A DNA stretch of 63,482 nucleotides, filler included, from Reticulomyxa filosa (lineage: Eukaryota > Protista > Foraminifera), in assembly GCA_000512085.1 (NCBI GenBank). It is 21 parts of 21 records of this genome, joined end to end, with 100 filler letters (N's around TTAATTAATTAA, not from the genome) between each part and the next. Parts side by side here need not be neighbours in the genome. Positions count along the whole stretch, not along the records: positions 7,566 to 8,889 come from ASPP01045181.1; 20 more parts are not named here. One strand, written 5' to 3'. Position 1 is the first letter of the stretch; each line of letters begins with the position of its first letter. Shown here one piece after another: positions 7,566 to 8,989 of this stretch. The notes under the pieces were generated by a model. That model was not told the origin of the DNA, made no database searches, and worked only from the letters and a program-made list of their open reading frames with translations. The position numbers and the translations under genes were made by a program.

Positions 7566-8322
7566 TTTTTTTTAATTAGAGCACGAGATATTGAACATTG
7601 CTGCTGCTCCATATATTATTGATAATCATATTCGGCATTTGCATCAACGTGGTACTGGAATAATTGTTCACAAACAATCCGCCAAATGTTTTATTCGCCC
7701 CAGTTTGTCCAATCCACTTGCATACTCCATTTGATAGTGGTATGCCTGCCATCACGATTACAACCGCACTGTGTTTTTGTTTGTTAAAAAAAATGTATTT
7801 TAATTCAAATCCATCATATATACAATCTATCTTTATTCTTACTATTTCTTGATATACGTATATCTCTTTTTTTTTTTTTTAATGAACTTTTTTTTTTTTA
7901 TTAGATCTTTATATAACTGTATGATGCTGATTTGTATGTAAATAATTGTGATGTTGATGATTTCTAGATGTATATGTAATATCCATTGCAAATATTCTGG
8001 TATACATATTCTCATTGGACAGCATTTGATGAATACGTATATCTTTGTGCACATTATTGAACATTTGCACTGACAATATTTTTACATTGCCATGGTCACG
8101 TAAATATTGCACACATGTCCACATTTGACTGAAAGAGAGTAGTTGGCCAACATATTCCATGATATTATTGATATATTCATATCGTCTTGAATTATTGAAA
8201 TATGTTTGGCCGTTTTCGTTTGAGTCGTCTCTTGCCACGTTATTTGCACTTGTTACCACGTAAAACGTGTTTAATACGTGCAGTGCTCTCAATATAATTT
8301 CATACACTGACGATGGCTTCAT
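7566..8322 (-). pseudogene. Unknown divergent multigene family, member A (3'-truncated, frameshifted)
   Basis: The first ORF (MKPSSVYEII...WTCVQYLRDHGNVKILSVQMFNN) aligns with the ORF at 18436-19008. A downstream IVCEQLF segment lies among stops. It shares an upstream leader with members B and C. Confidence 0.5.
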
Positions 8323-8425
8323 GTTGCCGCAAAACGACAGTGTTCTTCACGTAAGCTTTTCTTTTCCGTTTGCCCCCCCCCCCCCTCTCTTTCAGGGCAC
8401 TCTGAAACGGAAAGACGTCAGATGA
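8318..8425 (-). promoter_or_regulatory. Conserved upstream leader, copy A
   Basis: Reads TTCCGTTTCAGAGTGCC...G-run...CAAACGGAAAA...GCGGCAACATGAA. It matches 19004-19106 and partly matches 27464-27551. Confidence 0.6.
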
Positions 8426-8989
8426 TTAAAAAAAGTTTTAATTTTCTTTATTTTTTTTGAAAAGGCTGAAGATACTTGTACAAATTCAAAATAATAAGTT
8501 TGGAATAGTCCTCCAACCTTTTTTCAAAGCTAAAAAGAAAAATCAAAAACAAGATTGTAGCAAATTGCTTCGTCAATTTAGCCTCTTGATTTGTGTAAGC
8601 TACAAACTACAAAAAACAAGAGGCAATTAGGGTTAGTGAGAATCAAACTTATTATGAATGATTCTTAAAATCTATCTGCGTCATTGCATCCCTCTAATGG
8701 AAGACTTGCTAATGAACAGTTTCTTGATCTGTTAAATTTTTCAAATAGTCCTGCACTTTGGATACCTTAGATGACAACAAGTCCTTATCCAATTCAAAAT
8801 CCAAAAGAGTGTCTTTTCTGTTTTTGTTTTCACACGAGCGATGTACTTTTGTAAACTGATGCAATCACTTTATCGATCAATTTTTTTTTNNNNNNNNNNN
8901 NNNNNNNNNNNNNNNNNNNNNNNNNNNNNNNNNTTAATTAATTAANNNNNNNNNNNNNNNNNNNNNNNNNNNNNNNNNNNNNNNNNNNN

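What the first reader, a model, noticed from the sequence alone, without database searches (positions are those of the whole stretch)
8318..8425. Three unlinked loci share a conserved ~100-nt leader ahead of highly divergent, frame-broken genes
Seen in the sequence: three contigs carry the same minus-strand architecture before an ATG (at 8322, 19008 and 27468). It has three parts: a GTGCC box about 70-80 nt upstream (TTCCGTTTCAGAGTGCC / TTCCGTTTCGGTGTGCC / TTTTATCGGTGCC); a G-run followed by CAAA; and a start context GCGGCAACATGAA in two copies and GCTGCCAACATGA in the third. In copy A, TTTCCGTTT and AAACGGAAA can pair around the G-run. The leader looks better conserved than the downstream coding sequence, the reverse of normal pseudogene decay. 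Three hits in 21 contigs suggests a large genome-wide family. Inference: either a selected cis-element (promoter or structured 5' UTR) driving a diversifying multigene family, or the terminus of an unknown mobile unit.
Basis: partly seen in the sequence, partly recalled or inferred. Interest (0 to 1): 0.8.

Follow-up and report, generated by a model that had tools for sequence, protein, structure and literature searches.

The report
Conserved leader inside a foraminiferal repeat family
The conserved ~100-nt leader is real, but it is one of several conserved blocks inside a multi-kilobase, many-copy, gene-like repeat found only in the foraminifer Reticulomyxa filosa. It is not a folded RNA and not the end of a mobile element.

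Summary
The piece is a whole 1324-nt contig of Reticulomyxa filosa (gene model RFI_38482). The leader is real. Eleven more loci, fetched only through protein similarity of the ORF, all carry the same block directly before the same ATG. That block holds the GTGCC box, a G-run followed by CAAACGGA, and a GCAAC-ATG start. A 13th, most distant locus keeps only its 3' half.

A 78-nt core (window 8422-8346) diverges 0.22 on average against 0.38 for the ORF, and is lower in 66 of 66 pairs.
- Similarity is not confined to the leader. It runs about 200 to 1600 nt upstream within subfamilies and about 2.5 kb downstream. Other blocks are equally or better conserved.
- The proposed stem has no covariation and folds no better than shuffles.
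- The ORF evolves almost neutrally (median dN/dS 0.65, flat codon positions). This is not diversifying selection. The window copy is frame-shifted for 19 codons.

Copies are mosaics. The upstream-leader-signal-peptide module recombines with ORF bodies at about +75 (p <= 0.0005). The family has at least 53 annotated models, all from R. filosa, with no Pfam, Rfam or transposon hallmark.

Most likely reading: the 5' control or untranslated segment of a lineage-specific repeat or gene family that is largely decaying. Interest is modest.

The parts
8346..8422 (-). Conserved leader core (78 alignment columns, A3 cols 22-99). It holds the T-rich/TTTCAG stretch, the GTGCC box, the purine-rich AAGAGA + G-run + CAAACGGA stretch, and GAGAAAAG..TGAGTG.
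   Evidence: Present in all 12 aligned copies. Mean pairwise divergence is 0.22 against 0.38 for ORF1, and lower in 66 of 66 pairs.
8396..8400 (-). GTGCC box, 74-78 nt upstream of the ATG.
   Evidence: G, T and CC are invariant and the third base is G or A in the 12 aligned copies. The box is lost in L013 copy 2.
8373..8385 (-). Run of 13 G (C13 on the + strand). The other copies have only 2-6 G here.
   Evidence: The expansion is private to this contig: either slippage or a homopolymer sequencing error.
8405..8413 (-).
   Evidence: It pairs perfectly with 8371-8363 only in this copy. The two central pairs are broken in 6-7 of 12 copies and there is no covariation.
8363..8371 (-). 3' arm of the inverted repeat (AAACGGAAA).
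   Evidence: In L013:1195-1240 the segment between the two arms is inverted.
8329..8345 (-). Variable spacer between the core and the start context.
   Evidence: Mean divergence 0.54, with indels that are not multiples of three. It is therefore not coding.
8320..8327 (-). Start context GCAAC-ATG.
   Evidence: The ATG is invariant. The preceding (C/G)AGCA(A/G)C is nearly so.
7909..8322 (-). ORF1, 137 codons. It is the first part of gene model RFI_38482 (P0001). The first 26 codons (8322-8245) look like a signal peptide.
   Evidence: This frame is open for 133-299 codons in all 12 copies, while the other frames carry 1-14 stops. Median dN/dS is 0.65. AF2 is confident only for helix 3-27. There is no Pfam hit.
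8133..8190 (-). Stretch of about 19 codons read in a different frame from the rest of the family. It is bounded by a +1 and a +2 indel relative to L001/L002.
7768..7908 (-). A-rich stretch after ORF1. The annotated model places an intron inside it.
   Evidence: 84-89% identical to L001/L002. The block at the ORF1 end and this A-rich stretch is among the best conserved in the family.
7576..7767 (-). Second ORF-like conserved block. It is the homologue of RFI_30283 (P0004).
   Evidence: It is 77-84% identical to L001/L002.
8426..8676 (-). Upstream region shared with subfamily A copies (L002, L010, L007).
   Evidence: 92% identical to L002 up to the end of the L002 contig. This shows the leader is not a repeat terminus.

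Best explanation
The leader is the 5' proximal control or untranslated segment of a gene-like repeat unit found only in Reticulomyxa filosa and present in many copies.

The unit, laid out relative to the ATG:
- A subfamily-specific upstream region (at least 200 nt; at least 1.6 kb in one subfamily).
- The ~78-nt leader core, a ~20-nt variable spacer, and the GCAAC-ATG start.
- ORF1, with a signal-peptide-like start.
- Further conserved blocks out to about +2.5 kb, ending in a (GAAAAA)n-rich tract.

The leader is conserved as primary sequence, not as RNA structure. Most likely the progenitor copies need it for transcription initiation or for use of the 5' UTR. Individual copies, including the window's frame-shifted one, then decay nearly neutrally. 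The upstream-leader-signal-peptide module is exchanged between diverged copies by recombination or gene conversion, with a breakpoint at about +75.

Shown: the family, the extent of the unit, the conservation profile, the lack of structure, the near-neutral ORF and the mosaicism.

Inferred: that the core acts as a promoter or 5' UTR element, and that the unit is transcribed at all.
For: - Organism and family. There are 43 clusters at 50% identity and at least 53 gene models, all from R. filosa.
- The leader sits before the family ATG in 12 of 12 aligned loci that were found without using the leader. A leader profile hits once per locus and never before other genes in about 50 kb.
- Core divergence is 0.22, against 0.38 for the ORF and 0.54 for the spacer.
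- Similarity spans about -130/-200 to +2550 in all copies, and further within subgroups.
- Flanks differ between copies (a WD40 gene in L010, another ORF in L005), so the unit is dispersed.
- Mosaic: L004 follows L007 up to about +75 and L001/L002 afterwards (max-chi2 56, permutation p <= 0.0005).
- Recent pairs diverge uniformly with flat codon positions. Distant pairs have dN/dS of 0.45-0.65. This is the pattern expected when progenitors are weakly selected and copies are neutral.
Against: - There is no transcript evidence. Each protein look-up returned only the genome contig, so the transcription start and the splicing are unknown.
- The leader core is not the best-conserved block. One block at about +1630 reaches 0.87 identity.
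- In the most distant copy (L013) the GTGCC half is missing while the ORF is still open.
- All loci were found through predicted proteins. Open reading frames, and possibly intact leaders, are therefore over-represented.
- The TTTCAG just before the GTGCC box, with a CTGAC about 15 nt upstream, also reads as a 3' splice site.
Confidence: 0.5

Rival explanations
1. The whole unit is a non-autonomous mobile or retroposed repeat, and the leader is an internal segment with no role in any host gene. The uneven conservation would reflect what the progenitor elements need for their own propagation, plus gene-conversion tracts. ORF1 would be a decaying relic.
For: - Copy number is high and contigs break inside the unit.
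- The flanks differ between copies.
- Recent copies evolve neutrally.
- Unannotated degenerate copies exist. L013 copy 1 has an inversion, a 22-nt deletion and a truncation near +100.
- The 3' end is A-rich.
- There is no homologue outside the species and no confident fold.
Against: - There are no terminal inverted repeats, no long terminal repeats, no transposon protein domain and no tRNA-like part.
- No sharp common 5' boundary exists. Upstream homology differs in length by subfamily.
- Distant copies show dN/dS below 1 and keep one frame open.
Confidence: 0.3
2. The conserved TTTCAG marks a 3' splice site. On this reading the leader core is the start of a second exon of the 5' UTR, preceded by a 75-120-nt intron. 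The conservation would then reflect splicing signals (branch point CTGAC, pyrimidine tract, AG) plus exonic UTR sequence.
For: - CTGAC, a pyrimidine tract and CAG lie directly before the GTGCC box. A GTATCT-like donor lies about 75 nt upstream in the window and in L002.
- The average R. filosa intron is 87 bp (PMC13746701, table read).
Against: - The CAG is broken in L003 (CAA) and L008.
- The putative donor is absent in L010, and subfamily B has an unrelated upstream region.
- No transcript data exist.
Confidence: 0.12
3. The leader is a structured RNA element, a stem around the G-run, that regulates translation or stability.
For: The window copy has a perfect 9-bp inverted repeat. Across copies, 84% of cells in that helix can pair.
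Against: - The MFE z-score is +0.71, and 152 of 200 shuffles fold at least as well.
- The two central pairs are broken in 6-7 of 12 copies, and covariation equals the shuffles at 80 of 500.
- The inner hairpin fails as well.
- The consensus fold is -2.3 kcal/mol with no compensatory pair.
- No Rfam family matches.
Confidence: 0.03

Closest known systems
Multigene families with a conserved 5' region and signal peptide and a variable, recombining body. Examples are Trypanosoma cruzi MASP-type surface families (from my own knowledge) and Phytophthora CRN effectors, whose modules are shuffled by fragment recombination (PMC3726527, abstract seen).
   Same: - Dozens of paralogues exist in one genome.
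- The most conserved part is the 5' end (leader plus signal-peptide-like start).
- The body is much more diverged.
- There is a clear recombination breakpoint just after the signal-peptide-like region.
- Many copies are pseudogenes.
   Different: - There is no evidence of positive selection. dN/dS is about 0.65 and codon positions are flat.
- There is no evidence of expression or secretion, and no recognisable domain or confident fold.
- Conservation also covers about 2.5 kb of apparently non-coding sequence downstream.
- The organism is free-living, not a parasite.
Non-autonomous dispersed repeats or retroposed units with an internal 5' promoter region and an A-rich tail (SVA-like or SINE-like elements, processed pseudogene families).
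   Same: - The unit is dispersed, multi-copy and specific to one lineage.
- Copies decay neutrally after insertion.
- The 5' segment is conserved and the 3' end is A-rich.
- Assembly breaks fall inside the unit.
   Different: - No common sharp 5' end exists.
- There is no tRNA-like, 7SL-like or 5S-like part (Rfam).
- No partner element encoding a reverse transcriptase was seen.
- Target-site duplications were not testable.
Reticulomyxa filosa hypothetical proteins RFI_38482, RFI_03059 and RFI_30282 (GenBank annotation of GCA_000512085.1).
   Same: The window encodes RFI_38482 itself. The other two are its closest paralogues.
   Different: The annotation treats each as an isolated hypothetical gene. 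Neither the family, nor its shared leader, nor the multi-kb unit is described in any paper I could find. The genome paper itself was not readable here.

Membership tests
Structured cis-regulatory RNA / 5' UTR element | Conserved secondary structure supported by compensatory changes | tested here: not met
   one pair has double changes, which equals the shuffle mean. The covariation score is reached by 80 of 500 shuffles. The alifold covariation term is -0.08.
Structured cis-regulatory RNA / 5' UTR element | Thermodynamic stability above shuffled controls, or a match to a curated RNA family | tested here: not met
   z = +0.71; no Rfam match apart from a chance hit at E = 0.8 in a poly-A stretch.
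Transposable element terminus | Similarity between copies stops at the element end | tested here: not met
   The window and L002 are 92% identical for a further 250 nt upstream, up to the contig end. Subfamily B copies align to -1289/-1650.
Transposable element terminus | Terminal inverted repeats or long terminal repeats, and a transposase, reverse transcriptase or integrase domain | tested here: not met
   only low-complexity repeats; no Pfam family on any ORF or gene model of the unit.
Transposable element terminus | Target-site duplications and empty sites | not testable with these tools
   The unit ends are not defined, and the assembly cannot be scanned at the DNA level here.
Diversifying secreted/surface multigene family | Many paralogues sharing a conserved 5' end and signal peptide | tested here: met
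   at least 53 models; conserved leader and N-terminus. The signal-peptide call rests on inspection and the AF2 helix 3-27, not on a dedicated predictor.
Diversifying secreted/surface multigene family | Excess of non-synonymous change in the variable region (dN/dS > 1) | tested here: not met
   median 0.65, range 0.43-1.09; divergence by codon position is 0.36 / 0.38 / 0.42.
Diversifying secreted/surface multigene family | Mosaic structure from recombination between members | tested here: met
   max-chi2 39-56 and p <= 0.0005 for three triplets, with breakpoints at +75 to +135.
Diversifying secreted/surface multigene family | Expression and secretion of the products | not testable with these tools
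   No transcriptome or proteome is accessible. The look-ups returned genome contigs only.
tRNA-derived SINE-like repeat | tRNA-like region with A and B boxes | tested here: not met
   ARAGORN finds nothing in 8 loci. A B-box-like GGTTGAAATCC in the 3' block is only a resemblance seen by eye.

The most novel reading that the evidence does not exclude
The upstream-leader-signal-peptide module acts as a portable 5' expression cassette. Recombination at a fixed point, about 75 nt into the ORF, places it onto diverged bodies. This would give a free-living foraminifer a cassette-style system for varying a secreted or surface protein repertoire. The short inverted repeat around the G-run, which has inverted the intervening segment in one copy, could act as a DNA-level switch.
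Probability: 0.1. Interest if true: 0.6.

Novelty: new member of a known kind. Interest (0 to 1): 0.3.

Why it matters
Foraminiferal nuclear genomes are almost unexplored, and nothing is known about their promoters or 5' UTRs. A sequence block kept in dozens of copies directly before a start codon is a ready candidate for mapping a transcription start or a control element in R. filosa.

The result also has a practical use. At least 53 'hypothetical protein' models in the R. filosa proteome belong to one repeat family, and many of them are probably pseudogenes or chimeric predictions. They should be treated as such in gene counts and comparative analyses.

Otherwise this is an ordinary kind of object: a lineage-specific repeat or gene family.

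Tried and rejected
- Rfam on the piece and on four full loci: nothing.
- Pfam on the window ORFs and seven family ORFs: nothing above threshold.
- AF2 with a 44-sequence alignment: pLDDT 48, so uninformative beyond an N-terminal helix. I did not run fold searches on such a model.
- ARAGORN on eight loci: no tRNA-like part.
- Search for long terminal or terminal inverted repeats in two complete units: only A/T-rich low complexity.
- Exact-pattern scan of the metagenome collection for the leader core: one hit (L012). It is a 64% GC contig unrelated to the family, so a chance match.
- The R. filosa genome paper could not be read.
- I could not scan the R. filosa assembly at the DNA level. The genome collection on offer is bacterial and archaeal only. 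Copy number therefore rests on annotated proteins, and the sample of loci is biased toward open ORFs.

Full report
**What the piece is.** Window 7566-8889 is AT-rich (about 34% GC). On the minus strand it carries a 137-codon ORF starting at 8322. A word search found the ORF 99% identical to hypothetical protein RFI_38482 of the foraminifer Reticulomyxa filosa, on a contig of exactly 1324 nt. The piece is therefore a whole contig of assembly GCA_000512085.1. That assembly is highly fragmented: 50,809 scaffolds, N50 3.6 kb, about 30% repeats and a mean intron of 87 bp (PMC13746701).

**Checking the observation.**
- GTGCC at 8400-8396.
- A 13-G run at 8385-8373.
- CAAACGGAAA at 8372-8363.
- The start context GCGGCAACATGAA.
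- The inverted repeat 8413-8405 / 8371-8363.

Instead I took the two paralogues (L001, L002). I then ran an exhaustive profile search with the three proteins. It gave 43 representatives at 50% identity, 24 of them with E <= 1e-10. I fetched the contigs of ten of these (L003-L011, L013). All are R. filosa.

These loci were chosen by protein similarity alone. Even so, all 11 loci in the alignment carry the same leader directly before the homologous ATG. A profile of the leader hits exactly once per locus, and nowhere else in about 50 kb of fetched sequence that includes unrelated genes.

**Is the leader better conserved than the coding sequence?** Partly.
- With only the three closest copies the difference is marginal. 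The leader is 87-94% identical and the ORF 83-85% (Fisher p = 0.005 to 0.44). The region further upstream is equally conserved, at 92% between the window and L002.
- With 12 copies, a 78-column core (window 8422-8346) has mean divergence 0.22 against 0.38 for ORF1. It is lower in all 66 pairs.
- The ~17-nt spacer before the start context is the most variable part (0.54). Its indels are not multiples of three, so this region is not coding.
- In a DNA-level alignment the full 100-nt leader (0.29) is only slightly better than the signal-peptide part (0.31) or the ORF body (0.34). It is worse than the ORF end (0.25).
- Closely related pairs diverge uniformly over upstream, leader and ORF.
- In a profile of the whole unit over eight copies, the leader is one of about four peaks (identity 0.71-0.79). 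It is exceeded by the ORF1 end and A-rich stretch (0.82-0.83) and by a block near +1630 (0.87).
- L013 is the most distant member and was not used to build any model. There the GTGCC half of the leader is gone, while the 3' half and an open ORF remain.

**The leader is not an isolated island or a terminus.**
- The window aligns with L002 from 8673 down to the contig end at 7566. L001 and L002 align over 2025 nt to the contig end.
- Across all loci the shared unit runs from about -130/-200 to about +2550 relative to the ATG.
- Upstream of the leader there are two subfamilies. Subfamily A is the window, L001, L002, L004, L007 and L010. Subfamily B is L003, L005, L006, L008, L009 and L011. They align within but not between groups.
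- In subfamily B, homology continues to -1289 and, for L009/L013, to about -1650.
- Some copies share further colinear blocks beyond +3000.
- Flanking genes differ between copies (WD40 repeats before L010, another ORF before L005), so the unit is dispersed.
- No long terminal repeats, terminal inverted repeats, transposon domains or tRNA-like parts were found.
- The unit ends in a (GAAAAA)n-rich tract.

**No RNA structure.**
- The leader folds no better than shuffles: z = +0.71, and 152 of 200 shuffles fold at least as well.
In 6-7 of 12 copies the two central pairs are broken, and covariation equals the shuffled control.
- The alternative inner hairpin fails too.
- The consensus fold is -2.3 kcal/mol with no compensatory pair.
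- Rfam has nothing.

**The ORF.**
- One frame is open for 133-299 codons in all 12 copies, while the other frames hold 1-14 stops. The loci were, however, selected through predicted proteins.
- Substitutions are almost evenly spread over codon positions. The counts are 20/27/33 for L001-L002, and the family-wide divergences are 0.36/0.38/0.42.
- Median dN/dS is 0.65. It is about 0.6-1.1 for the closest pairs and 0.45-0.65 for distant ones.
- This is the signature of weak purifying selection in the lineages that gave rise to the copies, followed by neutral decay of the copies. It is not diversifying selection.
- The window copy is damaged. A +1 and a +2 indel near 8190 and 8133 put about 19 codons in a different frame from the family, and it carries several deletions.
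- L013 holds an unannotated degenerate copy with a 22-nt deletion in the signal-peptide region and truncation near +100.
- No Pfam family matches.
- AlphaFold2 with 44 sequences gives pLDDT 48, with only an N-terminal helix (residues 3-27) confident. That fits a signal-peptide-like start and says nothing more.

**Mosaicism.** L004 and L007 are 86-96% identical from -153 to +70 but only 61-67% identical from +100 to +400. In triplet tests, L004 follows L007 up to about +75 and L001/L002 afterwards (max-chi2 56, permutation p <= 0.0005). Two further triplets give the same picture. Synonymous and non-synonymous positions are equally affected, so this is exchange between paralogues, not accelerated protein evolution. 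The upstream-leader-signal-peptide part therefore behaves as a module that recombines with ORF bodies.

**Interpretation.** The best-supported reading is that the leader core is the 5' control or untranslated segment of a lineage-specific, multi-copy, gene-like repeat unit. It is retained because the progenitor copies need it for expression, and most copies are decaying (confidence about 0.5).

There are hints of what it might contain, all unverified and seen by eye only:
- A TGACGTC heptamer just upstream of the core in subfamily A.
- A TATAAAT string about 165 nt before the ATG in several subfamily B copies.
- A purine-rich tract around the G-run.

The rivals are:
- A non-autonomous mobile repeat in which the leader serves only the element (about 0.3).
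- A 3' splice site at the conserved TTTCAG, with the core as the start of a UTR exon (about 0.12).
- A structured RNA (about 0.03).

These cannot be separated without transcript data and a DNA-level scan of the assembly. Neither was available here.

**Novelty and interest.** The family appears only as scattered 'hypothetical proteins'. I found no description of it, though the genome paper itself was not readable. In kind it is ordinary: a species-specific repeat or gene family with a conserved 5' region and recombining members. Its main value is as a candidate handle on foraminiferal promoters and UTRs, and as a caution for the R. filosa gene count.

Noticed in passing
L001:1767-1815, L002:2050-2100, L005:2355-2405, L011:1663-1715 (outside the window contig): This is the best-conserved block of the whole unit, nearly invariant in 7 of 8 copies. 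It holds two adjacent hairpins: a 7-bp ACGGGGT/ACCCCGT stem, then CTCC-GAAA-GGAG. A diverged second copy of the same two-hairpin motif lies about 190 nt downstream. There is no Rfam or tRNA match. It could be a small RNA gene or a cis element of the repeat.
   Followed up: partly
L013:1195-1240: This is an unannotated degenerate copy. The segment between the leader's short inverted-repeat arms (TTCCGTTT / AAACGGAA) is inverted relative to all other copies. The same copy has a 22-nt deletion just after the ATG and ends near +100. It lies in tandem orientation about 2.4 kb upstream of a second copy.
   Followed up: partly
window 8373-8385: The run of 13 G (C13 on the + strand) is unique to this contig. 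The other 11 aligned copies have only 2-6 G. It is either slippage or a homopolymer sequencing or assembly error. The +1 and +2 indels in the ORF also sit in T runs.
   Followed up: no
L010:57-2151: Gene model P0041 joins WD40-repeat exons of an upstream gene to the repeat unit's ORF. This is probably a chimeric prediction. Several other family models (300-400 aa) likewise read through A-rich spacers into downstream blocks.
   Followed up: no
window 7566-7580 and 8880-8889: Both contig ends fall in A/T homopolymer runs inside or next to the repeat. Most related contigs (L001, L002, L004, L007, L011) also begin or end inside the unit. These are assembly breaks typical of a high-copy repeat.
   Followed up: no
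L012:1509-1537: This is the only metagenome contig matching the leader-core pattern exactly. It is 64% GC and has no other similarity to the family, so it is a chance match.
   Followed up: yes
L002:1452-1620, L001:1165-1280: Downstream of the window's extent the unit holds a short ORF starting MDD..., with a run resembling an F-box-like 'LP.QILM.I' motif. It is broken by stops in L001. The resemblance was seen by eye only and not tested.
   Followed up: no
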